DNA of 64,000 nucleotides from Lepidodermella squamata (taxonomy: Eukaryota; Animalia; Gastrotricha). The stretch covers positions 1,364,001 through 1,428,000 of the forward strand of contig JBLDXI010000011.1 in assembly GCA_047495785.1 (NCBI GenBank), in the 5' to 3' direction. The notes under the pieces are model-generated. The model had not been told where the DNA came from. It did not search any database and was given only the letters and a program-made list of their open reading frames with translations. Within the stretch, counting starts at the first letter, position 1, and every line of letters begins with the position of its first letter. The position numbers and the translations under genes were made by a program. Below, one piece after another: positions 5,141 through 53,998 of this stretch.

Positions 5141-5928
5141 TTTTTAATAAATATTACGCTGAAATGAAAACAATTTAATTTATATAAAATTTTCAAAATC
5201 AATTAAAAATTATAAACCAATTATATGAATTATTGATTTATCTTATTATTGAGACGCGCCGTATGAAAAGGCACCTTAAATAAGCTATTAGATAAGGATT
5301 TGATAGAGGTCTATTTTGCTAGTATATTTATTAGTGCGTAGTCACCCCAATTATGTGACGCAACAGAAACTTAAGGTCCCTTTTAATTTAGCGCGTCTCA
5401 ATTAAATTAAATTATTAAAATAAATATATGTAAGAAAAATTTACGAATTTTCGTATGCACCTATCAATCATTGTTTACCACGAAAAAAATCTTGATATAT
5501 TAGCCTATAATATTATTATAAAATAAATGCAGCAAACAATAACGATGCGATTCAATATCCAATTATCATTCACTTGCGCGCGCGCGTTTTTATTTTCAGC
5601 CCGATTGATTTTTAAAAGCCTCTATCCGATAATAAAAGGTCGTAATATAATATTTGGTTGCCCTGCTCTCTCATTTAATTGAGCGCGCACGCCTAATGCG
5701 CCACATTTATTTGTACACACCCAATATATAATGGGGGTATAATAAATAGATCAGCAATAAGCAATACCGTTAAGCACCTGGGAGAATCTCTAACCGCAAC
5801 GAAAAAAAAACCTATATCATTGTTTTATTGCGTAAAATCTGGGGACATTCTTTTTTGCTAAAATATATCGGAAAATTTCCAAGTTCGTCGCAAGATTATA
5901 GCTAATTATAGCCGTTGATTAGGCGTAT

Positions 5929-7683
5929 TCACTCGGCTGCGGTCTCTTCTAGCTCCTCAGCATCGCTGTCTTCGTAGGCTGGTACCATTGAGTCACCTTG
6001 CACTTGGCTCTCAGGTGCAAACGCGGGGGATTCGGGTGAAGCCGGTTGGAAAGATAGCGATCGCTCGCAGAGTGCGTGCATGGCCTCGACAAAAGGCGGC
6101 AAAATATTGCACGCTACGTCATTCCAAGCGTGATGCTGAAAAATTGGAAAAATAAAATTTCAAAAAAATAAATAATTAAATTTTTGAAAATAATTTAAAA
6201 TTTAAAAACTCAAGTTTTAAAATTTGAAATTTTTACAAAAATTTAAACTATTTTTTAAATTAATTATTACGTAAGTCATGCATAGCATGCGGTCGCAGAA
6301 TGCAGCACAGTTTTCGGGTTCGGTGGATTTTGGCCAGTTGTCCGGCTGCTCCGGCGCCCAGGGTGACTTGTGGTTATTGTTGCCAGACAAGGCGGCATCG
6401 AGCCCACTGCCATCGGGCCATTGCCAGGGTGCGGATTCGGATTTGCGGGTCAAGGCCACTCGAAAATTGCTCACATTGAAGCGCCAATCTGTAGAATTTA
6501 GAATCATTATTAAAATTATGAAAGATGAATGCTGACAGGGGAACTTACAATCGATCGCCATTTGAGCGAATTTGAACTCGTGATGGGTGCGTAGTTGGGC
6601 CAATCGACCGCCATGCTTCTCGCAGGCCGATTCTGCCTCGGCCTGGGTGAATCGCCCGGAGACTGGGTAGAAGAACTTGCCAATTGTGAACGCACCGCTA
6701 ATAGCCGCTGCGGCTAAACGAGCCAGGCCTGAGCCCTGACTTGGTTCCGAACCATGCGGATCCACCTTAAATAATATTTCAAACTACTACTGGATTTGAG
6801 AAATAAGGTATATTACCACTGCAAGAAAATCGATTTGACCGTTCGGAATGGAAATTGGAGCCTGGACTGGTACCGGTACTGGAACCGGATTCAGTGAACG
6901 CGCCGGAGCTGGAACCGGGGCGGGGGCAGGTGGTGGGTTTGTTGCGGCGACTGGAGCTGAGGTCGACTCTTGAGCTGGAACCTGAGCTGGTACCGGTACC
7001 ATTGCTGGAACCGGTGTTTGTTGAGCCTCGACTATCTTTACAGTTTGAGCCTGGGTTGAAGTAGCAACTTGACTGGGCGCCGTGGAACCCGATCCGGCCG
7101 GTTCCGGTTGAACTGGATTTGAGGTCACCCCATGGGTGACTGCGGGTTTCTGGGTGTCCACAGCCACATGGATGATCTTGCCACCAGGGGTAGTCGCCTT
7201 GGCTTTCTTGTTAGCAGCTACTTTAGCGCCCTTCGTGGCACCCTTCGCAGCCTTGGTTGCTCCCAACTTTCCAGTGACACCCTTACCAGCACCCGTCACC
7301 CCTTTTTTCGTGGCCTTCCCGCCAGCGGCAGCTCCTAGTTTAACGGTCGCTCCGCCCTTCTTAGTGGTACCAGCCACCTTAGCCGCTCCAAGTTTGATCG
7401 CCTTAGTGGACCCAGCTTTCTTAGCAGCACCCAGCTTGATCGCAGCCTTGGTGGTCCCCTTTTTGGCTGCTCCCAACTTGACCGCCGGAGCCGCGCCCTT
7501 CTTCGTGGTCGCCTTCTTAGCCTGACGTTTCGCGACAAAACCTTCAGCTAAAATGTCGCTTTCCAGCCGCCGCTCTTCGTCGAACTCATCAATCCGCTCA
7601 ACATTGTCCTCAAAATCACCCTGGGCCCTGGTACAGGCAATTACCAGGGTGATTATGAATGCGGCGAAAATCCTACTATTCAT
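5929..7683 (-). CDS. Secreted C-type lectin with Lys/Ala/Gly-rich and Pro-rich N-terminal regions
   Basis: Signal peptide MNSRIFAAFIITLVIAC. CTLD motifs AESACEKHGGRLA, WQWPDGS, WAPEQPDN, ENCA, then WNDVAC and ALCER in a last exon (6136-5929) that the ORF track misses. Confidence 0.85.
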
Positions 7684-8550
7684 AGAAACAAAATTAAGAA
7701 ACTAAGATAAATCGTCGCCCGTCCACCTTAAATACGAGCATTACGAGCGCGGCCAGGTGTGTGCGCGCGTGCCCGGCCACCTTAATTGCAGCCGACAGAC
7801 AAAATGATCATCACCAACTCTTAATTGATAGCAATTAATTACCGAACAGCCTGTTATATTTTCGCTCTGGTTACAAAAAAATTACTTGTCACCATATTTT
7901 CAGCCAGCAGACAGCAGCCAGACAGAGGAAACCATTTTTTGTTTATAAAACCAGTTAAAATTTCGAAAAAAATTTCGAAAAATTTCCTCTGCCTGGATCC
8001 TTCAACCAAACCTTTGGGGAAATCGAAACCGTCACGGAACCAGTAAAAACAGAATCGATTATTTTGTTTACCTTTTCTCCATGCGCCGATGAATCAGCAG
8101 ACCATCTGGTGCCCGCATGGCGTGGCACCCTTTTTCTCGTGAGCAAGCAGTCCATCCTAAATTATGTCTATGCCCCACTCACATACACTAATTCGTTAGC
8201 TCCTCTTGCGAAAACGATAAAAGATAAAAGATGAGCCAGCTGAGCCAAATCGTATCAAAATCAGCTGAATCCTGGCTATACTTATTCGCAACAAATATTC
8301 AGTTGCTCCCCATATCCTATCTCCTGCGATTGAATATATTTGATTGAGAGAATAAACAGAAAACAAGTCCTTTCCATTTGACGTGCTCTGAGTGGGCGAT
8401 AATTTATGCTAATTATCTGATCGGAAGATCGGATTATGAGGCGGATGATAACTAATCAGGAGGGCTGACGAAACATGTAAGAAGCTCGATTTCAAAACGC
8501 AAAAGCCTGTTCGCTAGTTTTTGCCATATCACAACATTGAACTTGTAAAG

Positions 8551-10950
8551 ATGCGTCATCCTAGATTTTTGTTCCTCGTTTTACTGGGTCTGTTCGAAAC
8601 TTCAAATTGCCAAACAGCTGTTTCGAAGCCGTATCAGCTTTCAGTGTTCAGCTCGTTTCTCATAACAGGTGCGGAACCTTCAACATCACAATGCTGCATG
8701 GCCGCCACAAAATTCGTAGTAGAAAACATCAATAATCGAACTGACATTCTACCAGATTATCATATCGATTTGTTTATCGATGACGAAAAAGTCAACAATT
8801 GGATGGGGCCAAGGCTTTTCATGAAATACCTTGACAACTACGAGAAACAAGCCGCGGATGGTCGCACCTACTTGTCACCAGTTATGCTAGGCCCAATGTC
8901 AGTTTGCAACAACTTTGCACTCGCCGCTAGAATTTCAGGATTCACCATGTTCTCACCGCAGTGCAGCAGCCCTCAAATTGCCTGGAAGAGGTCACTTTAC
9001 CCAAATGTTTTCAGCAGCCGAAGTTTTTCCGATGAGAACGCATCTGCTTGGATCATGCTCGTCAAGAAAGTAGGACGGTGGAAGCAAATCGGAATGCTTC
9101 ACAACTCTGCTAATGCTAACGATATCGCTGGTACGCTAGCCCTCGAGCGATTCTTTGTTGCAAGTGGTGTCGATGTTATCCATTCAGATGTCACGATTCT
9201 TTACACTGAAGAGTACGTAATCGCTGCGAAGCAAAGCAGAGCTCGGATATTTTTCATCGGATCTTCGCAACTTGCGTCATGTCTGGCGCTGCTGTGTTTG
9301 GCTTACAAGCATGGGATGCGAGCTCCTCATTACGCTTTTATCGTCAATGTCTACTGCCATTTCCAACCTAATGCTGTGACCGCATGCCCGTCAGAGCATC
9401 TCATAGCCATGCTGAGAATTACTTTTTTCGTAGGAATTTTCACCAATCCTTTAAGGCCGTTAGACATTCGAACGAGCTTAGGATATACGGCTCGACAGTA
9501 TGAAGAAAGTTTTTTCAAGTTCAACAATAATTCTCGTTGCTTTGACTGGGAGTTTCGACTCTACTGCCATGATTCAGCCATGACTGGATTGGTCGCCCTT
9601 AACAGGACTGAAACTTATCTACGGCAAAACTTTAACAAAACTCTGCGTGATTTCAAAGAAAATCCGGAATTATTTACTCGCATTGTCGGCAACAGTGCGA
9701 TTGAGCCTGAAATGTCCGGGGTAATTCGAGGTCCGATAAGGTATTCAAAATCCCGAGACCTGATTGGAGATACAGTGTTCATAGCACAACGCTGGTCGCA
9801 AAATTTGTTGAAATTATACTATACGGTGGAAAGAATTGACCCAAAGATAACATTGCCAACAAATTACTCTAATTACGAGTTGAAACGATTTCCGACAAAT
9901 GATACGCTAATTTGGTTGACCAAATCAGGCCGACCCCCGAAAGATCTATCAGAAATTCAACAACGCGTAGTTGTCTATCCGGTTAAAACTATGATTGTAG
10001 CCATAGTGATCTCAGGAATTTGTGCAGTTTATCTCCTTATTTTGACGGCCCTTTCGCTAAAGAGGAAATTATCTCGGCAATCTTCATGCTACTTTGATTA
10101 CCTCAACAACACAATCCTCGTAATTGGGTGTCTATTCATGTGTGTCCAATCAATTTTAATGGTTGTTGGTCTGAGTTTTTTCCCAGAGGAGCTGTGTAAC
10201 TGGAGGAAGGTTTTCCTATTGCTTGGTATGGCTCTAATCAACGGGGTTTTGTGCTTCCGAATGATATTTTTACCAAGTTTCATCCGCAATCATGGAAAAA
10301 GGAAGAAGGCTCAGAAATTTGCCATAAAGGAGACAACTTTAGTAGTTGTTGACGCTACGAAAGACAATCAGTCTTCATTTCGCTCGAATTCAGCTTTTCG
10401 AAGCGAAAATACAGTAACAATGAGTGAAAACGAGACAATTTCAGGAAAGAAATCTTCTGGTGCAGAGAAAAACGTCTTCTACGGCACTTTGTTCATCATT
10501 GTACTGACGCTCGTTGGCTTGATTGTTTGGTCCCTACTACATCCAATTCGTCTGGTATCCCGCGTTTCATCTCTTCAATTCGATGATGAGGAGGATACGT
10601 ATTTTGAAATTCAAGACGAGCTATGCCACTCGCCGTATCAAATCTACTGGACAGCCGCATTTTTGACCATCCACGTTTTCCTGCTAATTATCGGATGCAT
10701 CTTCGCGTATGAAACACGCCATGCTAAGGTTGTCAAGGAATTTCGGATGCATGTTAGATTAGCTAGGTTGTCCGTTTTAAATGCTGCTACCATTGCTATA
10801 GCAACTATTTTGCTGGTCTTTTCGTTACCAGGAGCTGGGGTCTATCTTCAGATTTCTGCTTTAGCGTTCTGCTGCTTGATATATGCCACAAGCTCTGCGT
10901 CTATCGTCTTATTTCCAGTTTTCAAGGTTCAAAAACTGACGCTGAATTAG
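8551..10950 (+). CDS. Class C (GABA-B-receptor-like) GPCR, intronless
   Basis: Signal peptide MRHPRFLFLVLLG, INNRTDILPDYHI (VFT start typical of GABA-B/ANF-receptor domains), GRWKQIG, RPPKD, 7TM with AYETRH. Paralog of the 109..2340 gene. Confidence 0.85.
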   Translation: MRHPRFLFLVLLGLFETSNCQTAVSKPYQLSVFSSFLITGAEPSTSQCCMAATKFVVENINNRTDILPDYHIDLFIDDEKVNNWMGPRLFMKYLDNYEKQAADGRTYLSPVMLGPMSVCNNFALAARISGFTMFSPQCSSPQIAWKRSLYPNVFSSRSFSDENASAWIMLVKKVGRWKQIGMLHNSANANDIAGTLALERFFVASGVDVIHSDVTILYTEEYVIAAKQSRARIFFIGSSQLASCLALLCLAYKHGMRAPHYAFIVNVYCHFQPNAVTACPSEHLIAMLRITFFVGIFTNPLRPLDIRTSLGYTARQYEESFFKFNNNSRCFDWEFRLYCHDSAMTGLVALNRTETYLRQNFNKTLRDFKENPELFTRIVGNSAIEPEMSGVIRGPIRYSKSRDLIGDTVFIAQRWSQNLLKLYYTVERIDPKITLPTNYSNYELKRFPTNDTLIWLTKSGRPPKDLSEIQQRVVVYPVKTMIVAIVISGICAVYLLILTALSLKRKLSRQSSCYFDYLNNTILVIGCLFMCVQSILMVVGLSFFPEELCNWRKVFLLLGMALINGVLCFRMIFLPSFIRNHGKRKKAQKFAIKETTLVVVDATKDNQSSFRSNSAFRSENTVTMSENETISGKKSSGAEKNVFYGTLFIIVLTLVGLIVWSLLHPIRLVSRVSSLQFDDEEDTYFEIQDELCHSPYQIYWTAAFLTIHVFLLIIGCIFAYETRHAKVVKEFRMHVRLARLSVLNAATIAIATILLVFSLPGAGVYLQISALAFCCLIYATSSASIVLFPVFKVQKLTLN

Positions 10951-30167: not shown

Positions 30168-33100
30168 ATGAAATGACGAAAGCTTTCCAAAATTTGAGAA
30201 CTGCCTCAATTGCTCGAAATTTGACATCACTTGCACCGAGGGAAAAATTACCAGAATAATATCAAAACACTCAACAAGAAAATTATTAAAAATGTGGAGG
30301 TTTCTTCTGAAAATTAGCCATCAAAAAATTGAAATAACTTTTTTCAAAAACAATGATTGCGTCTCTTATGAAATCATTTTTTGCGTAATATAGGCAAGAA
30401 CTCGAAATTTATTCTATATCACATAGAATTTAGATGCTCTTGGAATTTCAAAATTTTTGTTATTCCCGGGAATTTTTACGAATTTTACGAAATATTTGTC
30501 ATAAACGCGCAAATCATTTTATCAATTTCGGATTAAATTTGAGACAAGGAACAACAATTTTTTAATTTCAATTCGCGTTAGATTATTTTAGAAAAAATTC
30601 TAAAACTTAACGATTAATTTCGAAAATTCACCGAATTTTGAAAACATTGTTGAAAAATGTTGAAATTAAAATTATTCTGGTAATTTGACTTCTCCGTGAT
30701 TATACCGGTATATTAACCAAAAACTGATGATAACATTACATTGCCATTTTACCAATTGATCTTACCGATGTTATACTTTATATTATTATGTATTACTTTG
30801 TTGCCTATCTTCTTCTTGTTGGTGGTTTCAACTACCCGCGGAACTGCCGAAAAACTACACATGAACTACTATAATTTCTACTACGTTCGTTCGTTATATG
30901 TACTACACTGCTAGTACTTGGATGATACCGATGATGTTGCATTGTCTTGTCGCTCGCTTCTTTTTTTCTCGTTGCTGCTTCATTGCTCGAGTGATTTTCA
31001 GTCATGTACGATACCTACTGCATACGGATGACAACGATGACGTTATTATTCTCATCTATCTTGTCTCAATAACTAGTGAAATGATACTTATGTACAACGT
31101 TTTTTCGAAAATAAATTGCATTGAAAACTTGTTGAGTGTTTCATTTTTCTACAGGTTTGCAGTCTCGCAATGAATTGTAATAAAGATTCCTGTGCCGAAT
31201 TTAGAGCATAACATTGCTCTGAAGCGAAATTGTATCCTCAGGAAAATATTTGCAGCAGTAAGCTAATTTAAAAATGCAGCCGCTGAATTAAACCCGCAAA
31301 ATATGTATCGGAAACTAAAAGATGTTATTTTCTCGTTCAAGCGTTGCGGTGTCCATTTTTTAAGGTTTGAGCTAAACTCGATCTTTCATTTGCACCCAAT
31401 CCTACGAATCATTTTCCAGGAGATTAAAACACAGTGTTTTGAAAAATGATCAGTGTTATTTTGTTTTATTAAAAATGGTTAGTGATAGATCCAGAGTCAA
31501 AACACAAAACAATGCCGAGGTTCACAATTTACATAGAACTGACGAGGGTTTGTTTTTTTTCTAGCTTAAATTGGATTTGTCACGTGATTTCTTTGATGAT
31601 CAACTCGAGATGCTGATAATTTGAAGTCATCGAGCAGTTGAAAGGGAAACCCGTACCGGTTGGTTCCAACTTCCAAACAGGCCGCCTAGGAACATCGTCG
31701 GACAGAGCTCAGCCATTCGGTTCACGATTTCGAGTTAGCCCCAGCATTAATTCTTGTTAATCAATAATATCATAGCCTAAATGAAAAATGTGGCATTAGC
31801 ATCATTGCCACGAAGCAGTCATCGGCTTTATGTTACATGAAAAGTAGTCGAAATTTCTCCGACGGGGCTTTTGTAGATGCCATTTTGCACAATAGATGGA
31901 AGCCCGAGTGGACCTCGAAATTATGGAAAATAATTCTTTGGAAAATGGAATCGAAACTTCACTCGAAATGAGCAAATAGAACATTTTCGAATCAAAAAAT
32001 CATCATCAGACTAATGTGGTCGCCCATAAATGCCAGAAAATCAATAAAATCCCGACCGTTGACTAACCGGCTGGAAATTTTATTGACTCAGCCATGCCTA
32101 ACATAGCGAAAATGTTCCACGGATTCAACGGTTATGCGAATCATCTTAGGCTTTATACAAAAACTAAGGAAAATGACAGTGGCTCAACAAGCGCTCAAAT
32201 CCAGACCCTCAATGTTGGATGCGGAAACTGATAGAATCAGAGAATAATTCCGGGATTTGGTAAAAAATTGAAGTCTTTGGCAGTATATGCGCTGATTTCA
32301 AAGTACCACTTCAAAGCATCAGGGCGCGGGTGTGAATCTCACACATATCAAACAAATGTCTTTATTCACTTGACAACCTAAATGTGGCTCGAATCATCCG
32401 AATTTAGCTTTACTCGAAACCACGTTTTACCGATATAGATAATAAGAGAAGCTCAAGAGCTGTTTTTATCGTGGATGTTACTTCAGTAATTCCGAGGTCG
32501 ATGTTGGATGGGAAAATATAAAAATGCTCAAGTCAGGCTATTGAATGGTATAGATACCTGTTTGACTTCACTGGGCGTCATTTTGACCTACTTATCACTG
32601 TTAACCCATAGGTTTGCGCGATACTTCCTCATTTTGGTGTCGATTAGAGCTGCGGATCAAATCGAACTAACGGAATTTGAAAGTTCCTGGGCTCGGATTT
32701 TGGACAAAGTTTTAATATAGGCTAATATATTATTATTATTATTATGGATGCAGTAAGTAAGAACTCTCTATCATTCGCATGAGGCTATAGACTATCGCGT
32801 AAAAATTGTCTTTACACAGAATTCGATGCATTATGAAATTTTTGGTTGTAAATGCCCCCGCTGAACTAATACAGTATTGTTGAACTGAGCTGCTAGCTTG
32901 GCTAACTTATTCCCGGCAATAATCATCAGCTAAGCTGGCTCGCTTTTCATAGGAGCAAAGCTTGTTTAACAGAGCTCATGTTTAGCCGAGCTGACTATCC
33001 GCTAAAATAACAATGTACAACAGGCCAAAGTCGTAACATTTTAGCAAGCATGGTGACGCGACACTACACGTGTCTTCAGTAATGTATCTTAATTTTGGCT

Positions 33101-39494: not shown

Positions 39495-39542
39495 TTAGGG
39501 TTAGGGTTAGGGTTAGGGTTAGGTTAGGGTTAGTTTAGGGTT
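39495..39542 (+). repeat. Interstitial (TTAGGG)n telomere-like tract
   Basis: About 8 TTAGGG/TTAGG-like units, followed by degenerate ~21-bp repeats at 39589-39646. Confidence 0.85.
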
Positions 39543-40365: not shown

Positions 40366-43300
40366 TTACGCTTTCGATGAGCGGCTGTTACCGCCGGGCG
40401 ACGACGAGCCAGCCGAGCGTGACGCCTTGGCGCCATGCAGGGCTTCGTACATGATGACCTCACGCTGCGCCGCTTCCCATGACAAAACCTCGTCGAGAGA
40501 CGCGTCGATGTACGGAAAATTCCACCGCTCGTGCCAGCCGGGCGGCGAGCCAGACGGCGCCATCAGGGCCGCGTTGTCGTCCCCGCCCGCCAGGTCGTAA
40601 TCAGTGCGGAGTGGGGCGTATGGGAAGATGACAACGCCGCATTTGCGTAGCAGGGGCAGAACGGCGACGGGTAGGAGCGCGAGGGCGATTAGCACCAGGT
40701 CCATCCAGACCATTTGAATAGGGTAGGAGTGCGTGCTCAACAGGTTGTTGTCGATTTTCTCCGCCGCGTTGTAGGCGAAGTATTTAGGCGGCGCCAGCAC
40801 GCGGGCGACTACGCCAGCGCCAAGCACGAAACACGCGAGGCACGGCGACAGGAATCGCCAGAGAATTGACCAGAAGAAACAGGGCGGCTGACCCGTCGCC
40901 CGGGTGGTGGCCTGGCGCACCCTCGGCCACGAGTACACCCAGCCGAAGAGGAAGAGCTGGGCGATGGCGAGCGCCAGGGCGACGAAGGGTAGCACGTAGT
41001 CGTCCAGGCCTTGCAGTAGGTACGATCCGGTTGCGGTTGTGAAGGGGTGAGCGAAAATGAGGCAGAAGAGGGTGAGGCCGGCTGAGGCGAAGGCGGCGTT
41101 GCGAAGGGGTGACGGCAGGCGGGAGTGGCAAAGGACATTCACGGCCGCTGCTAAGTTGAACACGTGGCAACACGCCTAGAGAAAAATCAAAATTTCGAAA
41201 AAATAAAAAAATTTGAAATTTCATCTCAAAAAGGGTGGTAGTTAAAATTTTACAAAATCTGGGGTGACCCAATGGGTTCAAGGGACAGGTCCAAATATTC
41301 GAAAAAACACTCAGTCATCTGATTTAGGAAATTTTATAGCAAAAAATGTGATAAAAAAAGTTGAACAAACATTTTTTTTCGAAAAATCTCATTTTGTCAA
41401 CGAAAATTGATTTTTTAAGGAGGACTTTTTATTTTACCAAAATTAAATTCATGCGATATGTCGACTGATATTGACTAAATGGGTGGCCCGATGAGAATTT
41501 TGACCTCTAAGTTTAACCATCTGCGAATTTGATTTGTGTCTAAGGTATGTATCTCAACCTCTAACCGACGCGACACTACGGGGTGCTAACGCGAAAGCCG
41601 CGCCCTTTCAATCAAACAACACAAGAAGACTGAATCGCCACTTAGCAGTGCGGTCGAAAATTCGATCTCGAATCGATCTGACCCGATAATGCTCAATCAA
41701 GTTATTGCTCAAGCCGCCGCGGCTATTGCTCAATGCGGGTTACCGGCAATGCCGAACGATGCAATCACTCTCCGCAACTATTGCAACACTACAAATATTA
41801 TTATGGCTTTAATTATAGCCAAAAGTGTTGACATTATTGTAAATGTGGCGGCTGATGTTGTTTGTAATGTTAAATTTGATGTACATTTTGAGATTATTGC
41901 CAAGATTACCTTGCGTAAATAAAACATACCTACCTCAATAGACAAAATAAAAAATTCGCAGAAAACAAATGAATTTTTGTATATTTTTAGGACACCTTAA
42001 AATTACAAAAAATGATCTTCATTTTCACGCGATTGCTCATCACTCAACTATGCCAATCTCAGACGGCGGCAACGAGAGCAAAAAATAATGCTCGAAAGTC
42101 AATGATTCGATTCGCCATCTCGCTGATACGAATCAATGCAGCCGTTATCTTCCTTGCCATGCTGACGTTGCTGAAATTTCTAGCACTATTGACTATATCT
42201 CTCCTGCTTCAAGCAGCGTTATTTATCGTTTTAATAATGCTGATTTTTATATAACGAAAATTTTAATAAATCTGACTGATGATGATGATCCATTTTTTGA
42301 ACAAAAAAATATAATAAATTGAATAAAACATCATTTCATATTCGAAAAATGACTTGAAAAATTATGAACAAAAACGAAAAAATAGACGTAATGAGTGGCT
42401 CTTTGAAGAATGGAAATTTCAAGTCATTGAAACTGAGACAAAGACTGTACAGTTAGATTCGAACGGTCTGTGGCGTCAACTAGCATATCTCTGTGTAATT
42501 TAGAATTAATTATTTTCGCTGATTAAGGAGGACATATCTAACCTTCCGAACGGGGACCAAAATCCAGCCCAACCGGTATTTAACCATCTGCGAATTTAAT
42601 TTGTGTCTAAGGTATGTATCATGACCTTACTTCTCGATCGGTCCTCAAGGCGCTAATGCGTAAGCTGCGCCTTTTCATTCGAAAAATAAACATCACTTAA
42701 TCAGTTCACCAAAAATTCAGGGTTCCAGCACTGGATGTCCTCAATATACGAATTTTCGAGTTTCAAGTCTTCATCAGTCATCAGAGTCGAATTCTTAATT
42801 TCATGCTTAATGAGCATTCGGCGCTTATACAAGCCGATTTCGATTATCGATTATCGATTTTAAAAATTAGTGATTTTTCCGATAATAGCAATAAGTATTC
42901 CCTCTTGAGGGTACCAAATAGCTAAAATGAAAAATTCCCTGTTTTTTTACCTGTAATAAAGCTAGACAGATGAGAATAACAGCCGGCGCAATGTGGGTGA
43001 CCCATCGATTCGACGTCCAATTCGAGGTCATACCCAGAATCGCAACAAACGGCAAACTGGGCCCCATTTTCTCAATGAAATCTTCACTGCCACTGCCATC
43101 CGCGAAAGCACCCAGGCCAGTGAAGACAACGAGCAGGCACAGCAGGGACGCGACTAGGTGATGGCAAGTTAGCACGACAGCGTCTTTAGCGAAATGGTTC
43201 CGCAGCCGCAAATGAGCGCCATTCAGCCAAACAAAGCCGGACAGGGCGCCGACTGCGATGAGGCTCTGCGTCGCGGCGTCGAGCCACATTTGCGGCGACA

Positions 43301-46300
43301 CGAGTTTGTAGGCACCGTGCCATTTCAGCAGGCGTTTCATGCCTGAAATGAAAGTTTGAGGCAAGTTTGGCGCGAGAACGGCGCTGGTTATCGCACCGCC
43401 GACTAGGGTTGTGAACAGCAGGACGGCGAATGCGATGGTGAAGCCGTGGATGTGGCGGCGTAGTAGGAGCAGGAAGAAAACTAGGAGCCAGAAAAATATC
43501 ATACCAGCCAACACTTCGCAGACGAAACTGTTCGGAAAATTAAAAAATAAAATTAGTAAGATTAGAAAAAATTCGAATTTTTCAAATTTCAATTGTTATC
43601 TATTATTTTCAAATTTTCGATTTTTGATTTCCCGATTTGATGCATTTTTTCGCCACATTTTCAAGTTTAAATATTCTCGATATTTTAACGATCCTGAGAG
43701 ACGCTTGTTAAATTATTGAAAAGATCTCTTTCAAATTAAAAAATATTTGGACTCAGATTTCACCTTACCACAATCAAAGGCTCGAAATAGAAGCCCTTGC
43801 CAACGCGGGTTATTTTATTTGGCGAAGGACTTCATGATATCAAATCTTATAGCCCTCTGTCTGCTTTCAACAACAAAACAGAAATGAGACATAAATGTAT
43901 CAAAGCTGAGGCAATTAACAAGACTGTAGAAGTCAACAAAATGCATTGCGCATATCGCTGGTCATAAGTCGTTCTCCTCTTAATCTTATTCTGTTATAAA
44001 AATAAAGACACGCGCAAGATTCTGGACAACAATAGCAAGGAGCTGCGTAGCCGAAGCTAGTTAAAAAGTATTTACACTATATTTACACTATACCACCGAG
44101 ATCGAGACGGAATATTTACAAAGATTAAATAAACAACAGATGCTTAAACGCGCCCAAAGGCGTACCAGCCACCGCTTCGCACGATATATCCTTTCGGATA
44201 ACATCAGCGACAGGTCGGACATGTATTAGCGCACGGTTGCCGAAGTTACCAGCGAGTTGGACCATCCGGTCACGGAGCAGCGGTAAACCAGCACGGCGAC
44301 AGAGCTCAGCACCATTCAGGTGTTCACGCGGGTCGATTCCGAGAATGAGGCGTAGTGCCCAGTTCTGAAGAACCTCAAGCCGACGAAACTGCTTGGCCGA
44401 GACGTGCAGAAAAGTCGCACAGGCGTACTCAAGGATCGGTCTGACCGTCGTTACGTAAACCAACTTCCGCGTCTCGAAGGACACGGGCGATCCCGGATAA
44501 CAGATCGAGGCCAATCCAGCAATTCGAGACCGAGCGTCTTTGACGATTTTGTCGAAATGCAGTTTGAAGGTCTGATTACTGTCGAATAAGATGCCGAGGT
44601 ACGTAGCTGATTTCACAACAGGCAACTGTTGACCGCCAATACGGAGATCAGGGACTTCATTCGTGTTGAACGCCATCACCTGACATTTCAACGGGTTGAG
44701 AGGAAGACGCCACAGCCGACTCCAGCGCTCGATCTGCCGTAGTGCAGCTTGCACTCTCGCCGTCGCCAGACCAGCCCAACACGCCGCTTCGCAGACCAAA
44801 ACGTCGTCAGCGTAAGTAGCAGCAGAGGCGGTACCAAGGCCAGCGTCATCCGGATACAGATCTGCTGTGAAGAAAGCAAAGAGTATTGGACTCAGGGCAG
44901 AGCCTTGCGGCACGCCCGAGCCGATGCTGAACTTTGTAGGACTGAAAGAGTCACCCACCCGGACGACAAAGGATCGCCCTTCGAGGTAATAGAAGCCCTT
45001 TCGCTTAGACCTAAACACGAAATTTGAAAATTGGGAAGGATAATATAGGTTTGTTGGAGGGGCTTCAAACTTCGTTGGAAAGTGAAATTAACCATCTGCG
45101 AATTAAATTTGTGTCTAAGGTATGTATCCGATCCTCCAGTAGTGTGAGACCTAGGGGCGCTGAAGCGTAAGCTATGCCCCTTTCAAAGAAAATACAAATA
45201 CGTCGAAACTAAGGTGCTAAAGCAAGGTGCTTCAATACTTTGAATTTCACTTTCTCATGATTCCTGCCAACATAGGCCAGTAATTTAGTAATTTTAATGA
45301 AAGAGAGGCACTTCGAGATCCGATACCCAAATGAAAACGTCATATTGATAAATTGGAAGTTTTATCTATTAATCCAATTAAATGAAAAAAACCAGCTAGT
45401 TTTACGGCTATCATAGCAAAACTACTAAATTGGGACTGCAGAACATCGCCAGTTATTTTTTCCATCAATTTTCGATTTTCTGATTGAAAAAAATATCGGA
45501 ATATTTCTGATATTATAACGATCTTGACCAAGCGCTAAACTCGATTAAGATAGAAACTTATTAAATCAATGAAAAAGAATATCTTATAAATTAAAAAAGC
45601 TAGAACTCAGTTTGCACCTTGCTACGATTCAAATCTGAGCAACAAGCCCTTTCGTTATAATTCCAATCCGAAATTAGGAAATTGGAGATAATATTTCAGG
45701 TCTGTTAAAGGGCCCTAAAAATCGGTAGCGAAGTGTAATTAACCATCTGCGAATTTAATTTGTGTCTAAGAGGGTTGTGATCGAAACGAGCAAACATTTA
45801 ATCCACCTTATTCCACGCTATTCCACGCTTTATCCCACGCTATTCCTTGATTAACTTGGCGAAACCTTCTCAATTAGAGAAATTTTGCTTCAAAAGAGGT
45901 GATCGAAAGAAGCAAACACGCCAAAACGCACTCTATTTCAGAGTAAATTCAAAGTAATCGCGAATTTGTGCGAAAATAGCTGTAATTTATTTATTTTCGT
46001 CAATTTTTGAGGGATAAAACGAGAATTTTGGGGTCAAATCTGCACCCCAGTCCGGACTGTGTCATAAATTTGCTTTAAAATGAGCAAATTTAGTGAAAAT
46101 TTCAGAAAAAGCTGCGATGATTCACCGATGATTCGCCGTAAAAATTGCGCAACAGTTGACGTCAATATTGCGTTTAGATATTACCCTCGCCTCCAAACCT
46201 TTGCCGCCCGGCCTATTGGCCCAGCAAGATTAGCGCGATCTCTTTATACGGTTCAGAGCTCAACAAAGCACACCTTTAATAATCGAATTTCTGGCCGTTT

Positions 46301-48098
46301 TAGTAATAACGTGAAATCATGGATAGGTAGATTTGTGAACTAATGAATAAGCATTGATCGTTTATTAGGCTAACATCTTCACAAGTTGGAGGCGTATAGC
46401 TACCGGCAGTCGGATTTTCAATAGCGGGGAAGTTGAGATTAACCAAGTTTTTGGGGGTCATCCGACCTGAATTCGGGTCATTCACAACATCCGAAAAACG
46501 TGTTAGCGGCATTGAATAATATCAACCTAGGTAACTTCGTTGTCTTCGTCACTAATGACACCAAACATACCTTGCAAGATTTCAACACTTATTTCTATTT
46601 CTATTAGATATGATTCGCAAGGAGAAGAACACCCGCTGAAATGCGTCTTGTGTCTCGTGACATTGAAAAAATGTGCGAAAAATGCGTGAAAAATTGTTCA
46701 AATGTTACAAAATGGCACTGAATTTGCAAAATCAATCCGAATGCAGGCTTGCATTGTTACATCATAATCGCGAATATTGCGCGTCATTGGGACCATTGTT
46801 ACTGTCAACACATGAAAACTTGTACATTTCAATTTGCTATCGAATTTGTTCCGAGAATAGCGCAAACCTAATGACGGGACAAATTTACTGAGAGAAATAA
46901 CAAATAATTCTCGAAAGCTAAAATGACACAAATTATTTGCTTCTTTCGATCACAACCCTCTAAGGTATGTATCCTCTCTTCAAGTAGAGTGAAACCTAGG
47001 GGCGCTAAAGCGAAAGCTGTGCCTCTTTCTAACCAAAAACAAACATAAAAATAGCTTATCAAGGTATTTGAGTTTTTTCAAATTTACGTTCTCGCCTATT
47101 TCTGCCAACTTGAGTCAAATATCTTTCAGGAAGTTATTTTCTTTCTTTTCCCATCCAATTCGCTTGAAGAAACAATGAGAGGCAGTTCGAGAACCGAGAT
47201 CCAAATTTTGAAATGTCTCACGAATTTTGGAAATTTTGTATCAATTTTAATCCAACTTAATTTTAAAAAAATCAGCAAATTTTACGGCCTTCATAGAAAA
47301 TTTGCTAAATTTGGTCATTTTCACCTATCGGAACACCACTAAATCAAGTTTCAAAAACTTGGAATCTGTAATTTTTAAGAATTTCTTTCCAATTTTTCTG
47401 ACATCTTTTCGGACCAATATTGAATAAAAAACTTACTAGTGGCGAATGTGGGTCATTGTTTCAATGCTGGGCACGTTCCCAAACACATCGCCATGCAAAA
47501 AATCGACAGCAGCACCAGGCCGGAGGTTTTCACCGGCCTGATCGCGCCTGACCCACAGCGGCTCCTCGCTCGTAATAATCGACTCATTGCCACCAGTCGA
47601 CTTCCAGGTCGGATAGGCGAGTAGGAAAGGCGCGTCAAACAAGTGAACGAGCGAGTGCCACGAGATGGCGAACGACCACGCGGCTGGCGTTGATGCGTAG
47701 ATGACAACATATAGCATGTAGATGAAAGCTGACAGGCCGAGTCCGCACAACGCCGGGTGCAATTTCGGCCACGCCAGGTAAGACTGTGACCAAACGAGTT
47801 GGCCGACGAACAGTTCGCAGCACAGTATCGGCAGGGTGATTAGAAAGGCGCACGTGACTAGGGGCACCAGAAACGCGGCGCCGTGCCTTGCGTAGATGTA
47901 GGGCAGGCGCCATGATGACGCCGCGCTTAGGGAGTAACCGACAACTGCGAGGAGGAAATGCGGTTTGCCGAGAGCGGCGACCCGCCGGTGGGCCCTCAGG
48001 GGTGATATGGGTGCTGAAGGGGGCGGTGGGACAGGTTCACTTGGCAGTAACGGCTCGCCGGCTGAGGCCGAAGTTGTGTCCTTGATATCAGCGGTCAT
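40366..48098 (-). CDS. Divergent SLC6 (neurotransmitter:sodium symporter family) transporter, 3 exons
   Basis: Exons 48098-47437, 43527-42951, 41175-40366. Motifs WRLPY, AFLVP, ELFVGQ, WLDAATQ, FAKDA, GPSLPF, TGSYLL, FGWVY, WRFLSP. Confidence 0.88.
41513..41608 (+). ncRNA. Candidate spliced-leader/snRNA-like gene, copy A
   Basis: TTAACCATCTGCGAATTTGATTTGTGTCTAAG|GTATGTATC, then 29 nt, then GTGC-TAAC-GC-GAAA-GC-C-GCGC hairpin, then CCTTT. Confidence 0.55.
42580..42675 (+). ncRNA. Candidate spliced-leader/snRNA-like gene, copy B
   Basis: Same 41-nt head, 29-nt spacer, hairpin AAGGCGC-TAAT-GC-GTAA-GC-T-GCGCCTT. Confidence 0.55.
43799..44987 (-). mobile_element. 5'-truncated non-LTR retrotransposon (I/Jockey/CR1-like RT), recent insertion
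   Basis: Intact RT C-terminal ORF (GVPQGSALSPILF, YADD, LNPLKC, YLGI, RPILEY) ending at 44125. Flanked by a perfect 13-bp TSD AATAGAAGCCCTT at 43786-43798 and 44988-45000. Confidence 0.92.
45088..45183 (+). ncRNA. Candidate spliced-leader/snRNA-like gene, copy C
   Basis: Same head, 28-nt spacer, hairpin AGGGGCGC-TGAA-GC-GTAA-GC-T-ATGCCCCT. Confidence 0.55.
45739..47028 (+). pseudogene. Candidate spliced-leader-like gene, copy D, split by a DNA transposon
   Basis: Head at 45739-45769 and remainder at 46964-47028 rejoin into an intact unit when 45770-46960 and one TAA are removed. Confidence 0.7.
45770..46960. mobile_element. Non-autonomous PIF/Harbinger-type DNA transposon (1191 bp)
   Basis: 25-bp TIRs gagggttgtgatcgaaa(cg/ga)agcaaa, 3-bp TAA TSD (45767-45769 and 46961-46963), no transposase ORF. 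Confidence 0.9.
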
Positions 48099-48405
48099 TT
48101 TTCAGGGTAAATGAGGTCTCAAATCGCCATGGTTAATCAGCAGTTAAAAAAATCACACAAAATTAAAGCTCTAAAAAAAATGAAGAAATTCTCCTTAAAA
48201 CTGTGAAAAATGAAAAAACGGTAAATCAGCGCAATTCGAACGCAATAATTAAAGCACTTTAAAAATACTAACGTAATTCAAGATTTTATTGCACACTTTT
48301 TTTAAGCAGGTTGGCACCTCGTAGGAATAATTAAATGAATCCAGGTATTGAAATTCGACGTTGATAACATCAAAAATGCGCCTCAAAATCAGGTGGATCA
48401 GGGAT

Positions 48406-48499
48406 TTAACCATCTGCGAATTATATTTGTGTCTAAGGTATGTATCTTCGCCTCACCGTCTCGAACCCTCAGAGCGCTTACGCGAAAGCTGTGCTCTTT
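48406..48499 (+). ncRNA. Candidate spliced-leader/snRNA-like gene, copy E
   Basis: Same head, 27-nt spacer, compensated hairpin AGAGCGC-TTAC-GC-GAAA-GC-T-GTGCTCT. Confidence 0.55.
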
Positions 48500-49597
48500 A
48501 AAAACAACACAACAAATCCAGAAATTTTTTTTATGACAAACTCTGCGGAAAGTTTTCTAAAAAATGACGCTAATGCTATATTTCCTCTACAGAAAAAAAT
48601 AAAATAAATCGCATTGAGTTAAATCGGGATATAGCGCTCAGTATATCGGTGTCACGTAAAAAACTACTCAGTAGATGCGCGCATTATGCCACGCAAAAAA
48701 TCTGATGAGATTCAATAAAAAGGCGAGACATGAGAAAATATGTATCCACTTTAAAATTGGTTGTATAAACGAATCAATCACCCAGCGATAGCTGAGCAGC
48801 ATTAAAACCACTAGATAAAAAATGACAAATTTTAATATAAAAATTCCGCCTTAATAATTTGCACCAATAATAATCGAATTGGCCAGAATATAAAAAAATC
48901 TGCGTTATATTATATTGCTTGATTGAGTGTATAGTGATCAGAATAATAATAATAACAATAATACCTAATAATTACATGGACTTGGAAAAGTCGTGCGTTG
49001 TCACGGTTGTGTGAGCACGCAAAAAACCAGCACTACTGCATATGTCATGTTAATTAGTTAATTATTCATGAGAGAGCAGAGGACACGCGCCGGCCGGCCG
49101 CCTGACGCGATGTGAAAAAAACCCACTACGACGACAGCGAACCGGTCAGTTGATTTCAATACACATACCTATACTAGAAAACAGCTGTTCAAGCAACGCG
49201 CGACTCATCAAGTGTAAAAATAAATAAATAAATTCAGGTAGATTATCAAACTAATCCCGCGCACTGAGCGACAAATTTTAGGGACAATATAACAATATAA
49301 CTCGAGGGTAATAGCAAAACAAATAAAGGCGTTGTTTTCTTTCGTTGTTTTTGTTATTTCGAGGTCGCAAATGATGCGGCTCAATTTCGCGAAAAGCTTA
49401 TACCAATGCTGCGGGAAATTTCAATCATTAGATTAGAATAGATGTCGCCACCGCCGAGGGTGGCCAATACACGACTAAAAACAGCGCAAAATTAGAATAT
49501 TCAGAACGAAAAGATGAGGAATTATTTTTGCTGAACAAAAGAGCGTCAAAAACCAGAATTCACGGGAAAATTCAAGAGCGTAGAGATCCAAGAAATT

Positions 49598-49678
49598 TTA
49601 ACCATCTGCGAAATAATTTTGTGCCTATAAGGTATGTATTCCACCTCCCAATCGCGTTACGCGAAAGCTGCGCTCTTT
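49598..49678 (+). pseudogene. Degenerate copy F of the spliced-leader-like unit
   Basis: TTAACCATCTGCGAAATAATTTTGTGCCTATAAGGTATGTATT with a shortened spacer and a partial hairpin. Confidence 0.5.
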
Positions 49679-50526
49679 ACGATTGCGCTCACTCGAATTA
49701 TTAAGGCGGATTTTTTTAATTAAATTCCTTCACTATCAGAAATGCAAAAATAATGGAAAATAATGTCAAAAGATATGAAATTCTCGGTAAAATCGGACGA
49801 CCATCAATAACAATAAACAGAATAAAAAATCGGGTGCGCCATGTTGCGTCGAAGAAAACAAAAAAGCGCGCACAGGTAAAACAGAAATTCACCAGACGAA
49901 ATAATACCTTATTCATAATATTATATACATTATAGGAATTAAATAATGATAGTTTTACTAATCATAGGTAATAATAATGTTATCACAAGCGTGAGCGAAA
50001 ATTATTCCAGGCCGCATCAGCAGCCGCCGCCGCATCATCTGTTGATTATGACGGCGGTATAATGATAATAGTATAAAATGAAAGCAACAGAATTATCATT
50101 CGGATACGTGTGCCTGCCTATATATCGCAACAGCATCAACAACAAGACGGCGGTCTGTGTTTTATTTACCAATAAATACCGACCGACCTGGCACCGTCGA
50201 TAATTATTCTTTTGCCGACGCGGGCGAATCAAGGGCGTTAAACAAATCGCGATCGGGCGCACGCGGCCAGGCGTGCACAGGCTTTTATATAACAACAACA
50301 ATAATAATAACAACAGTGGCAACGATGAAATAATAATTGAAATCGTGAGGAAATTATTCGCAATTTTCGAATAAATAGTAGGTTATATTGACTAAATAGC
50401 GGCCTAATTACTACCGCGAAGTAGCCAATTTCCGCAGATTGTTTTTCGATAAAAGTAGTAAATAATAAGGTTCTATATTAAGGTGGAATAACAAAATATT
50501 ATTCCTCTCCAAAATGTATTTATTTA

Positions 50527-51385
50527 TCCGTTGAGCATTCGTTGAGCAGAATTATTTCCCGTGCTCAATATAATTTTGCAATGTTAAGCATTTCGTTGTG
50601 CAGTCATTGTGCAACCTTTAGGCGATTGTGCAGTCATTGAGCAGTCATTTACCACTCATTAAGCATTCGTGAAGCATTCGAGTAGCGAACGTTGAGCACT
50701 ATGTGCAGGGTTTACGCACCCATTGTGCAATCATCAATTTTTGCTTTTAGCACTCGTTGAGCAGTCAAATTTTTAAAAATTAGAAAGAAATTCAGAAAAA
50801 TCCGTCAGGGCCGGGAATCGAACCAGTGACTTTGACCACCAACGCCTGCAATCGAATCGATTGCGCCACTGGTTCGCTATGAAAATCAATCACAAAAAAC
50901 CGATTTAAAGTGGATTTTTTTATATTTTGCCGTATTGGCAGTAGGCATCACTGCCGGCATTGGCCGTTTTTTTCACAAACAGCCAGTTTCGGGTATCGGC
51001 AGTATTGCCATGTGCCAGTAAAATTTAAGAAAAGTAAAAAAAACTAAAAGCCCATTAAAAAATCCGTCAGGGCCGGGAATCGAACCAGTGACTTTGACCA
51101 CCAACGCCTGCAATCGAATCGATTGCGCCACCGTCATCGGGTTATTGTCGGAACTAGAAAATGACTGATCAATGATGGGGCATATTTTCAATAATTATTG
51201 GTGTGCTCAACGCGTGTCATAAGACGTGTTAAGCACATTTTGAGCACAGTTTGAGCACTTGTTGATGATTCATCCTCTGGTTAGGCTCTAGTTGTTCACG
51301 AATTGAGCGCAAATTGTGCACTGCTTTAGCACGCGTTGAGCAAATTAAGCACAGGTTTAGCAATTGAGCAAAAATGCTCAACGGA
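50527..51385. mobile_element. MITE carrying two identical tRNA-derived modules
   Basis: TIR tccgttgagcatt / aatgctcaacgga, flanked by TA (possibly TATTTA). Many subterminal ttgagca/ttgtgca motifs. Identical 74-bp blocks at 50796-50869 and 51058-51131 with A-box TGGCGCAATCG and B-box GGTTCGATTCC on the minus strand. Confidence 0.8.
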
Positions 51386-53998
51386 TATTTATTATTAATT
51401 TTTATTTAGTAAAAAATCCGAAAATATCGCACTAAATCAGACCTCGATGTTTTGGCCTGGTTACAAATTCCCAACATCCGGAACCAGAGAACTCATATTA
51501 CAGCAACTTTTGAATTCACAGGAAATTTTCAGGAAATAGGAAAATACAAATACAAAAATCCTATGAAGAGCGATCAAAGTAAATAACTTGAAGATCACCT
51601 TCGAGTTCAAGCTCCGATGCCGGTGAAAATAAAGAAAACAAACTAGTTGTCACCTTCAAAATATGGAAATCCCTAGCCGAAATATATATTCAATAGAAAT
51701 TGAAAAAATTAAGACCACCAAGGAATTAATCATTCGAGAAGACTTCACGTCTAAAAATTCAAAGATATTTTTGACAAAAATCTTCCAAATGAGACATTAT
51801 TTTCAATAGCTGAAGGTGTTCGCAGTTCCTCGTTAAAGACAAGGATATCCTTGCTCAAAAATCACAGCAACAAGACATCAAATTGGAAAAATAACTACGA
51901 TTTTCGAAAAAAATCTACATCCTACTTTTTCAGACAAAAAACACCTTAACTCAAGTAATTCAGGTCAGATTCGGCTACCAATGAATAATAGATGGGCAAC
52001 GTGTATAAAAAATTCAGCAAACGACTTAGCCCGCGCATAAAATAGCCGAAATTCACTAGCAAATTGAAAATATTGGAAAATCAGCCGGCGATATAAAATC
52101 AATCCAAAGCGACATTTCTAACGAAAAACTCGAGGAATCTATTTATGATTCATTGCTATCATGGCTAAGACTAAACAAATTTTAATTCGATTTCTCCCGA
52201 AAATATCTTCGATTTCCTTGCGAATAAATTCTAAATTTTTTATCTTCAACAAGACTGGGGTTCCCCTTGCCGCATGCTGGAAAAAAGTCTTGAAAAATCC
52301 AGGGTAATATCCGATAAAAAAAACCTGATACATTTACGGACCACCCTGAGAGAGCGACGAAATTTCTGCGACGAGCGTGTTTTTTCAAGGCGCACCAAAA
52401 TAACGCCGCGAGAATGCACCCGCGGACGGAAGTCTCGCCGGATATTAGCCTCACGCTTTTGATATACCTGGACGAGGTATCTTTCTATCTATATTATCTG
52501 GCCGAAAAAAGAAGATAATGCAACAGCCGCGCGGCGTGTTATGATAGCCGTATGCGCTGGCCAAAAAATGCGCTATGGCGTGCGCGAAAAAAACGACGAC
52601 ATCTCACAGACTTTTATACCTGATGTGCGCATTTCATTATAGAGAACTGGTAAGATTTGTTTATCCGAGGCGCTGCTGTGAGCTGAGTGAATTAATATAG
52701 GTATAGGTATTATAGAGGTAGCTATATGCTATAATAACACAAGGCGAGTGCCTGTAACAACACGCCGGAATAACAATGAGCTCGCTTTAGGTTCGGCCGG
52801 TTTTTCCGCCGCAACGCACGCACGTTATTAAGTCTCGCTAAATTCGAAACGGCCCGTAATGATGATGATGGGAGGAGGAGGAGGAGGATAACAGAAAAAG
52901 CGTTCAATAATGACGGTGACGCGACTTTTTGTTGTTTTCCATTACTATTACAGCGATACTGATAATGGTGGAAGGAGAAAAAAAACTAACACGTGAAAAA
53001 AACTAAATGGGAGTGGAAGAAAAAACGAGATTGCCGGCGGCCAGGAATAACTATAGCAATAACCACCCAAGCGTGTCACAATAATGATTTGATAATTCCA
53101 CTCAAGCATAAAATCCTAAAGATAGTTTAAATGTGCGAAACTCCATTTAAAAAGCCCACCTTAAAAATTATCGCTTTTCGTTTTACACGCGTTTTGTAAT
53201 GAGTGAAGAAGCAATAAAACGCGCTCGCAATTTACGAATCAGGTCACGGCGGCGAGTTGCGTTTTATTGAAGGTCCTCGATTTGCGTTTTACTTGCGGTC
53301 AAAACTCGCAATGCACTGAAATAAAATTGCGTTAAAGAAAGCCACAAGGAAATCGCGAGTAAAAAATCACAGCGTGTGAAAAAAAGCAGTCACAAGGGAA
53401 ACTATGCGGCTAGCTAGTGGCGAGTGTCGCAGCAAACACTCGACGTGTTGAAAAAACACTGCAGCACGCGTGCCGCTTTTAAAACAACAAACACGTTGTG
53501 ATACAGGCAATGATACTGCGCGCGCGCCTCTCGCTCTCAAGTGGCGTGCGATACATCTAGAGACAAAGATAGGGACTTATTACAATGAGAGATGCAATGT
53601 TCTTATATATAGTTTGATTGCTGCCGCCTTATAGTATAGTATAAAAGAAGCAGTGTATCGATACAAGTATAAAGTCGGTGCAGGCGCACCAGCCAAAAAC
53701 TGGCCGGACTAATAGACCAAATCTAATAACTCAATCGCCGGCGCGCGATGGAAAAAACCAGCGTCCATTTGTGCCACTCACTCATATGCACACATCATAT
53801 GTACCCTCGATTTTTTTCACATCTTGTGACCCGCGCCCAACACATCTCATATCGCTTTCTCATTTTTTCCGCACCACTGCGCTCGTTATTCATTATTTTT
53901 ATTATTTATTTCGTGTCAAAACGATGATTTCATTATACAAATGTTGTAGTTTTTCAGTGCTTGATGTGTATGTATACAAAACGAGAATGAATGCGCGG

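What the first reader, a model, noticed from the sequence alone, without database searches (positions are those of the whole stretch)
41513..49678. Cluster of six co-oriented structured ~95-nt units: candidate new spliced-leader (trans-splicing) or snRNA-type RNA gene family
Seen: six + strand units (41513, 42580, 45088, 45739/46964, 48406, 49598) lie in the introns and 5' flank of the minus-strand SLC6 gene. Each has a near-invariant head TTAACCATCTGCGAATnnnATTTGTGTCTAAG|GTATGTATC. In the five full copies, head variation falls only in the 3-nt loop (TTG/TTA/TAA/TAT) of a GCGAAT/ATTTGT stem; degenerate copy F has a compensatory A-T swap in that stem. A CCT that can pair over the AGG of the donor follows. 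The 3' hairpin has a GNRA loop (GAAA/GTAA) and covarying base pairs (GGG/CCC, AAG/CTT, AGA/TCT), then TTT and an A-rich tract. Established: SL RNAs are ~50-140 nt, with a short 5' exon, a GU donor in a stem-loop and a 3' hairpin, and they occur as repeated genes. ATTTGTG resembles the U1-type Sm site. Inference: a ~30-nt leader AACCATCTGCGAATTTAATTTGTGTCTAAG is trans-spliced onto mRNAs, with the Sm-like site unusually in the exon. I do not recognise this leader sequence.
Basis: partly seen in the sequence, partly recalled or inferred. Interest (0 to 1): 0.9.

Follow-up and report, generated by a model that had tools for sequence, protein, structure and literature searches.

The report
Dispersed spliced-leader RNA gene cluster
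Six small genes in and beside a transporter gene of a microscopic animal (probably a gastrotrich) encode a 30-letter tag that the cell pastes onto the front of many messenger RNAs, a known process that I found no report of for this animal group, and these genes lack the usual protein-docking (Sm) site behind the tag.

Summary
Confirmed: six co-oriented ~95-nt units, each a 30-nt leader (varying only in its loop), a GTATGTATC donor, a variable spacer and a covarying GNRA hairpin. Four are intact, D is split by a MITE on one haplotype, F is degenerate. In a spliced-RNA run, about 1,000 contigs lie on the stretch. Depth piles on ~29 nt of the leader (60,000-616,000, against 40-65 on SLC6 exons), while the 3' halves are empty. 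Loose ends run into unrelated ATG-bearing sequence. A metagenome copy sits beside 5S rRNA in rDNA. They are spliced-leader (SL) RNA genes. Leader and donor stayed 38/39 identical between tandem duplicates whose flanks diverged ~30%, so the copies are constrained. Not shown: transcription of these six loci, the partners' AG acceptors, the cap, Sm binding. No Sm site lies in the intron half; the only candidate is exonic. The host is probably Lepidodermella squamata (circumstantial), and I found no paper on gastrotrich trans-splicing. The scan noted SL genes earlier on other DNA of this genome (rDNA spacer, acceptors); this dispersed cluster was not followed up. Verdict: new variant of a known kind.

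The parts
41515..41609 (+). SL RNA gene copy A: leader 41515-41544 (loop TTG, identical to the 5S-linked copy in L003), donor GT 41545-41546, 3' hairpin 41580-41606; antisense in SLC6 intron 2
42582..42676 (+). SL RNA gene copy B: leader 42582-42611 (loop TTA), donor 42612; antisense in SLC6 intron 2
45090..45183 (+). SL RNA gene copy C: leader 45090-45119 (loop TAA), donor 45120; in SLC6 intron 1; tandem ~650-nt duplicate of D
45741..45769 (+). Copy D, 5' part (leader, loop TTA), cut by the MITE one base before the donor
45770..46960 (.). 1,191-nt non-coding MITE, 17-nt perfect terminal inverted repeats, TAA target duplication (45767-45769 and 46961-46963; PIF/Harbinger-like by that signature); absent from a second haplotype, where D is intact
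   Evidence: one search shows a DNA contig skipping 1,194 nt = element plus one TAA
46964..47028 (+). Copy D, 3' part (last leader base, donor, spacer, hairpin)
48408..48500 (+). SL RNA gene copy E: leader 48408-48437 (loop TAT), donor 48438; upstream of the SLC6 ATG
49600..49679 (+). Degenerate copy F: altered 32-nt leader, donor 49632, spacer cut to 9 nt, left arm of the hairpin base lost, no A-rich tail; probable pseudogene
   Evidence: depth 0.23 in its bin in the RNA run
40366..48098 (-). Host SLC6 (SNF family) gene: exons 48098-47437, 43527-42951, 41175-40366, one open frame of 682 codons plus stop; intron 1 splice seen in RNA
43799..44989 (-). Truncated LINE reverse-transcriptase fragment with an 11-bp target duplication, in the upstream flank of copy C (90 nt from the leader)

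Best explanation
The units are dispersed paralogous spliced-leader (SL) RNA genes, and most of A-E are, or until recently were, working genes. Each would give a ~94-95-nt capped RNA (inferred; by analogy RNA polymerase II, ending after the hairpin at the T/A-rich tail). The spliceosome cuts at AAG|GUAUG and joins the 30-nt leader to an unpaired AG acceptor near the start of many pre-mRNAs. Shown for the leader family: RNA coverage of the leader alone, about 1,000 contigs, and loose ends running into ATG-bearing sequence. Inferred: the spliceosome's role and the AG acceptors. The donor block is invariant to +9; +4 to +9 (UGUAUC) is the exact complement of GAUACA in U6, which suggests an extended U6/donor helix (inferred from human U6; the host's U6 was not checked). 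The leader loop and the 24-26-nt spacer are free to vary and act as linkers. The donor helix with CCU and the bulged GNRA hairpin are constrained, probably as protein-binding sites. There is no Sm site in the intron half, so the snRNP either uses the exonic AUUUGUG, as proposed for dinoflagellates, or needs none (untested). The main gene copies sit with 5S in the rDNA spacer; this cluster is an old outlying array that grew by local duplication.
For:: run X2 is spliced RNA (SLC6 intron 47436-43528 removed, intron depth about 0). Depth is 616,211, 88,903 and 59,855 on the D, E and C leaders, width 29 nt, against 40-65 on SLC6 exons and 0-1 on the 3' halves; 1,009 contigs were laid, against 163 in the DNA run. 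Three loose ends reach an ATG within 9-27 nt of the leader end; in DNA the loose ends come after GTATGTATC. Leader variants with TTAA and TATA loops are abundant in RNA, exist in DNA and are absent from this window, so several variant loci are used. The L003 copy lies ~145 nt upstream of 5S, next to the 28S 3' end. Leader identity is 0.96 and donor 1.0, while the spacer is at 0.48 (shuffled 0.46). C versus D: 38/39 identical while flanks are 68-73% identical at aligned positions, P about 2e-4. Compensatory pairs in the hairpin. U6 sequence from PMC12467241.
Against: No contig ties expression to these six loci: their unique 3' halves have no meaningful RNA cover, and TAA/TAT depth could partly be other variants placed by ties (183 contigs fit two places). 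The data are contigs from a single RNA run, not raw reads. The partners' AG acceptors could not be checked, because none lies in the window. One RNA loose end (48441) continues with GTAT and may be an unspliced paralog. No leader was seen on SLC6 itself. No clear shared promoter motif upstream (identity 0.54 vs 0.50 shuffled). No intronic Sm site.
Confidence: 0.72

Rival explanations
1. The leader is a real SL, but these six copies are silent orphons or pseudogenes shed from the rDNA-linked array; all trans-spliced leader comes from other loci.
For: No RNA cover of their own 3' halves. F is degenerate and D is MITE-broken on one haplotype. Many other copies exist (summed DNA depth on the heads about 170 times single copy, a rough figure). 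No clear promoter motif.
Against: Leader and donor are nearly invariant and the hairpin changes are compensatory, while spacer and flanks have diverged to near-random identity; neutral decay would not do that. Variant-loop leaders are used in RNA. An RNA-seq library is not expected to retain the short unspliced RNA.
Confidence: 0.2
2. An unspliced snRNA-type family (U7-like or SmY-like) whose Sm site is the ATTTGTG motif and whose GT is incidental.
For: The ATTTGTGTCTAAG motif resembles U1 and U7 Sm sites (from memory); size ~95 nt; 3' terminal hairpin.
Against: RNA cover stops at the donor, and the head sits on about 1,000 contigs. The donor is invariant to +9. No Rfam family matches, even at E 10.
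Confidence: 0.04
3. Termini of a Helentron/HINE-like or MITE transposon family (TT start, 3' hairpin, T run).
For: Starts with TT, ends in a GC-rich hairpin plus T run; multicopy in DNA.
Against: All six are co-oriented with no inverted partner. I saw no target duplications. Length is fixed with a randomised interior. There is a 5S-linked homologue and a 10^4-fold leader-only RNA signal.
Confidence: 0.02
4. Guide-RNA-like family in which the 24-26-nt hypervariable spacer is a targeting sequence (an earlier first-stage note).
For: The spacer has a fixed length and near-random identity between constant modules.
Against: No match beyond 9-13 nt elsewhere in the window (only 64 kb tested). SL intron halves are generally poorly conserved (PMC3795323). 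The spacer shrinks to 9 nt in F.
Confidence: 0.02

Closest known systems
Metazoan SL RNAs (nematode SL1/SL2, flatworm, tunicate, cnidarian, chaetognath)
   Same: Short leader ending in WWG followed by a GT donor, ~95-nt RNA with hairpins, multicopy, linked to 5S/rDNA (PMC3795323, PMC12460157, PMC7986045). Starts with AAC like flatworm and euglenozoan leaders (PMC3795323).
   Different: Part of the leader searched as a word was found in no paper and no Rfam family matches. No Sm motif 20-60 nt behind the donor, which is the SLIDR default. It ends in AAG, not the flatworm AUG. I found no paper reporting SL trans-splicing in gastrotrichs.
Dinoflagellate and Perkinsozoa SL RNAs
   Same: No Sm site in the intron; an Sm-like motif in the exon has been proposed for dinoflagellates, and none is found in Perkinsozoa (PMC9399869).
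   Different: Unrelated sequence; animal host; longer RNA (95 vs 50-60 nt) with a sequence-conserved bulged GNRA hairpin; the exonic motif is AUUUGUG rather than AU4GG.
C. elegans SL2 family (dispersed sequence variants beside a 5S-linked SL1 array)
   Same: A family of leader variants on dispersed loci next to an rDNA/5S-linked array (eleven SL2 variants, PMC7986045; the SL2 operon role is from my own knowledge).
   Different: Here the same leader type is both 5S-linked and dispersed. No operon-specific use is shown. No sequence similarity.

Membership tests
SL RNA | 5' exon found at the 5' end of many unrelated mRNAs | tested here: met
   leader-only pile-up of about 29 nt among ~1,000 contigs; loose ends into ATG-bearing sequence. 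Indirect: contigs from one run.
SL RNA | Canonical GT donor directly after the leader in the gene | tested here: met
   AAG|GTATGTAT in all six copies and in L003
SL RNA | AG acceptor upstream of the junction in the target genes | not testable with these tools
   Partner sequences are not in the window; only one read-laying run was allowed; SLC6 showed no leader
SL RNA | Donor within a 5' stem-loop, plus a 3' hairpin | tested here: inconclusive
   The 3' hairpin is supported by covariation. The donor helix (AGG/CCU or ACC/GGU) is possible but invariant and weak.
SL RNA (usual form; exceptions known) | Sm site in the intron between hairpins | tested here: not met
   The only Sm-like motif lies in the leader; exceptions are documented in PMC9399869 and PMC3795323
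SL RNA | Multicopy genes, often linked to 5S rDNA | tested here: met
   L003 copy beside 5S and the 28S 3' end; high DNA depth on the heads
SL RNA | Capped (TMG) ~95-nt RNA bound by Sm proteins | not testable with these tools
   Needs small-RNA or cap sequencing and immunoprecipitation
Known Rfam snRNA/SL/SmY families | Match to the family covariance model | tested here: not met
   No hit at gathering score or at E 10 on the units
Helentron/HINE or MITE ends | Paired inverted termini and target-site duplication or empty sites | tested here: not met
   No inverted partner for any head; the only TIR/TSD element is the MITE inside copy D

The most novel reading that the evidence does not exclude
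Gastrotrichs have an unreported SL trans-splicing system with two related SL RNA types. One is a large family of loop variants on dispersed active loci; it has no intronic Sm site and is assembled through an exonic Sm site or a new protein that binds the bulged GNRA hairpin, possibly with a division of labour between the types like SL1/SL2. Because gastrotrichs are close to flatworms, this would test whether SL trans-splicing is ancestral to both or arose twice.
Probability: 0.3. Interest if true: 0.78.

Novelty: new variant of a known kind. Interest (0 to 1): 0.58.

Why it matters
The patchy distribution of SL trans-splicing in animals, and whether it arose once or many times, is an open question. 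A system in the probable closest relatives of flatworms, with a different leader end and no intronic Sm site, is a direct test case. The natural variation across these paralogs maps which parts of an SL RNA are constrained (leader, donor to +9, CCU, hairpin) and which are free (loop, spacer). In practice, default SL finders that require an intronic AT4-6G site would discard these genes, and gene models for this genome need outron-aware 5' ends.

Tried and rejected
Rfam at gathering score and at E 10: nothing relevant. Literature searches for part of the leader and for gastrotrich trans-splicing: none. Viral contigs: no copy. The two marine metagenome contigs of a relative (L001, L002) keep the F-box-like/ZDHHC17 neighbourhood but show no SLC6 and no unit. 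Exact look-ups for RNA contigs of window genes failed, so no full leader-mRNA contig could be fetched. A shared upstream promoter motif is not significant; the sigma-70 scan is irrelevant to this host. Guide-spacer targets in the window: none convincing. Whole-unit folding energy is not significant. In one search copy D was joined one base off; this was corrected. The SLC6 exon borders were corrected.
Full report
Observation. The six units are present as described. Taking the RNA start at AACC, they are A 41515-41609, B 42582-42676, C 45090-45183, D 45741-45769 plus 46964-47028, E 48408-48500 and F 49600-49679. All are on the + strand, and a covariance model finds no others in the window. Four exact head-plus-donor matches occur against none expected by chance. 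Each unit has a 30-nt leader, AACCATCTGCGAATnnnATTTGTGTCTAAG, then GTATGTATC, a 24-26-nt spacer, a 27-nt hairpin, TTT and an A-rich tail. Mean pairwise identity is 0.96 for the leader, 1.0 for the donor block, 0.77 for the hairpin and 0.48 for the spacer, whose shuffled value is 0.46. Within the spacer only C-C/T-T at positions 5-7 and one C four bases before the hairpin are fixed. The hairpin has three pairs with changes on both sides and is the only part that folds better than shuffles. The 5' stem and the donor helix never vary in full copies, so they are possible but unproven.

Setting. A and B lie antisense in intron 2, and C and D in intron 1, of an intact 682-codon SLC6 gene; E and F lie upstream of its ATG. 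C and D are a tandem ~650-nt duplication. D is split one base before its donor by a 1,191-nt MITE with 17-nt inverted ends and a TAA duplication. A DNA contig of lower depth skips exactly 1,194 nt there, so another haplotype has D intact. A truncated LINE with an 11-bp duplication sits in C's upstream flank. F has lost most of its spacer and its tail and is probably dead.

Host. The window is from a divergent invertebrate: its ZDHHC17 is at most about 38% identical, over most of its length, to named proteins. The scan holds 1,993 windows on 147 pieces at a 62-kb step, about 123 Mb. The best DNA run is from 2024 and shares a study with a 101-Mb organism; the RNA run is from 2015. This fits the gastrotrich Lepidodermella squamata: 122 Mb, 157 contigs, 43% GC, sequenced alongside C. 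elegans (PMC11660948). The identification is circumstantial; no marker gene was compared.

Outside copy. The single exact head match in metagenomes is a complete unit with A's leader and its own spacer. It lies ~145 nt upstream of a 5S rRNA gene, which faces the 3' end of 28S. SL genes are typically near 5S or in rDNA clusters (PMC3795323; PMC12460157). The same contig holds a second SL-like unit 329 nt upstream, with a 33-nt leader, a GT donor and the same hairpin architecture. I looked for it after earlier notes mentioned two such genes in this genome's rDNA spacer.

RNA evidence (window 44950-50500). Run X2 is labelled only as probable RNA, but it is spliced: SLC6 exon 1 joins exon 2 at the predicted borders and the intron has almost no depth. 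Of it, 1,009 contigs lie on the stretch. Summed depth is 616,211 on the D leader, 88,903 on E and 59,855 on C, each about 29 nt wide. SLC6 exon depth is 40-65, and the 3' halves have 0-1. In the DNA run the heads are also elevated (2,855-8,777 against about 95), because other copies exist. There, however, the cover is wider (31-35 nt, a rough estimate), only 163 contigs are laid, and loose ends come after GTATGTATC. In RNA the enrichment is about 15,000-fold versus about 170-fold in DNA; summed contig depth is a crude measure. The RNA loose ends shown leave 2-7 nt after the leader end, probably where the partner happens to resemble the MITE start, and they reach an ATG within 9-27 nt. A fourth, at 48441, continues with GTAT and is ambiguous. 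Every listed insertion in RNA maps to the leader loop, giving TTAA and TATA loops that exist in DNA but not in this window, so more than one variant locus feeds leaders to RNA. This is the expected signature of SL trans-splicing. Limits: contigs only, one RNA run, acceptor sites not checked, no leader seen on SLC6, and no locus-specific transcript.

Are these six copies functional? Expression cannot be assigned to them. Constraint can: C and D differ at 1 of 39 leader-plus-donor positions while their flanks are 68-73% identical at aligned positions (P about 2e-4 at 25% divergence). Across copies the spacer is randomised while the hairpin is kept by compensatory change. Gene conversion limited to the head cannot be excluded, but it would not explain the hairpin. 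I put A-E as working or recently working genes at about 0.7, and silent orphons at 0.2.

Mechanism. Shown: leader-only transfer pattern, donor, hairpin constraint, 5S linkage. Inferred: polymerase II transcription, capping, and spliceosomal trans-splicing to AG acceptors. [quoted passage not shown] This suggests an extended U6/donor helix; the host's U6 was not checked. The intron half has no Sm-like run; the only candidate, ATTTGTG, is in the leader. An exonic Sm site is proposed for dinoflagellates, and none is found in Perkinsozoa (PMC9399869). The second SL type in L003 has GGTTTCTTAG just before its hairpin but no ATTTGTG in its leader, so the exonic site is not shared and stays a hypothesis.

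Comparison and novelty. It works like, and by its defining trait is, an SL RNA family. It fails the usual criterion of an intronic Sm site between hairpins (PMC12582326; PMC7986045), a criterion with known exceptions. No Rfam family matches. I found no paper with the leader's 3' part or with trans-splicing in gastrotrichs; the library omits most subscription papers. Earlier notes of this scan report SL genes in the rDNA spacer and leader acceptors on other DNA of this genome. I treated them as leads, and my verdict rests on my own tests. Class: new variant of a known kind. Interest 0.58.

Noticed in passing
L003 1143 to about 1045, minus strand: Second SL-like unit 329 nt upstream of the first: 33-nt leader starting AGTCATC, GT donor, a U-rich GGTTTCTTAG just before a 7-bp stem with a 4-nt bulge; not present in the window.
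   Followed up: partly
window 45770-46960: The MITE is polymorphic (absent on one haplotype) and multicopy (DNA depth 250-420 vs about 95). Its first base restores an exact 30-nt leader without a donor.
   Followed up: partly
window 45298-48900, DNA run X1: Two haplotypes differ strongly (e.g. 25 substitutions and 28 gap letters in ~370 nt) and at unequal depth (about 60 vs 34-42), which could be amplification bias or uneven ploidy.
   Followed up: no
window 43799-44989: Truncated LINE RT fragment on the minus strand with an 11-bp target duplication, 90 nt upstream of copy C; not at the donor, unlike the SL-targeting LINEs of earlier notes.
   Followed up: partly
window about 39497-39540: Short degenerate run of TTAGGG repeats (interstitial telomere-like).
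   Followed up: no
window 50796-50869 and 51058-51131: Two identical 74-nt direct repeats with a tRNA-like look, inside a repeat-rich element at about 50500-51400.
   Followed up: no
window 33055-33067 and 41567-41579: A 13-nt exact match between the spacer of copy A and an intergenic site upstream of ZDHHC17; within chance for six spacers.
   Followed up: partly
window 29337, 34026 and 56268: Several genes have a TAG 3-20 nt upstream of the ATG after a T-rich tract, candidate trans-splice acceptors; not tested with reads.
   Followed up: no
L001 and L002: A marine relative keeps the F-box-like gene upstream of ZDHHC17, whose second intron appears absent or much shorter there; no SL unit found nearby.
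   Followed up: partly
window 46900/46988, run X2: One low-depth contig (3.9) joins D's 3' half to the MITE end on the opposite strand; probably an artefact or pre-mRNA.
   Followed up: no
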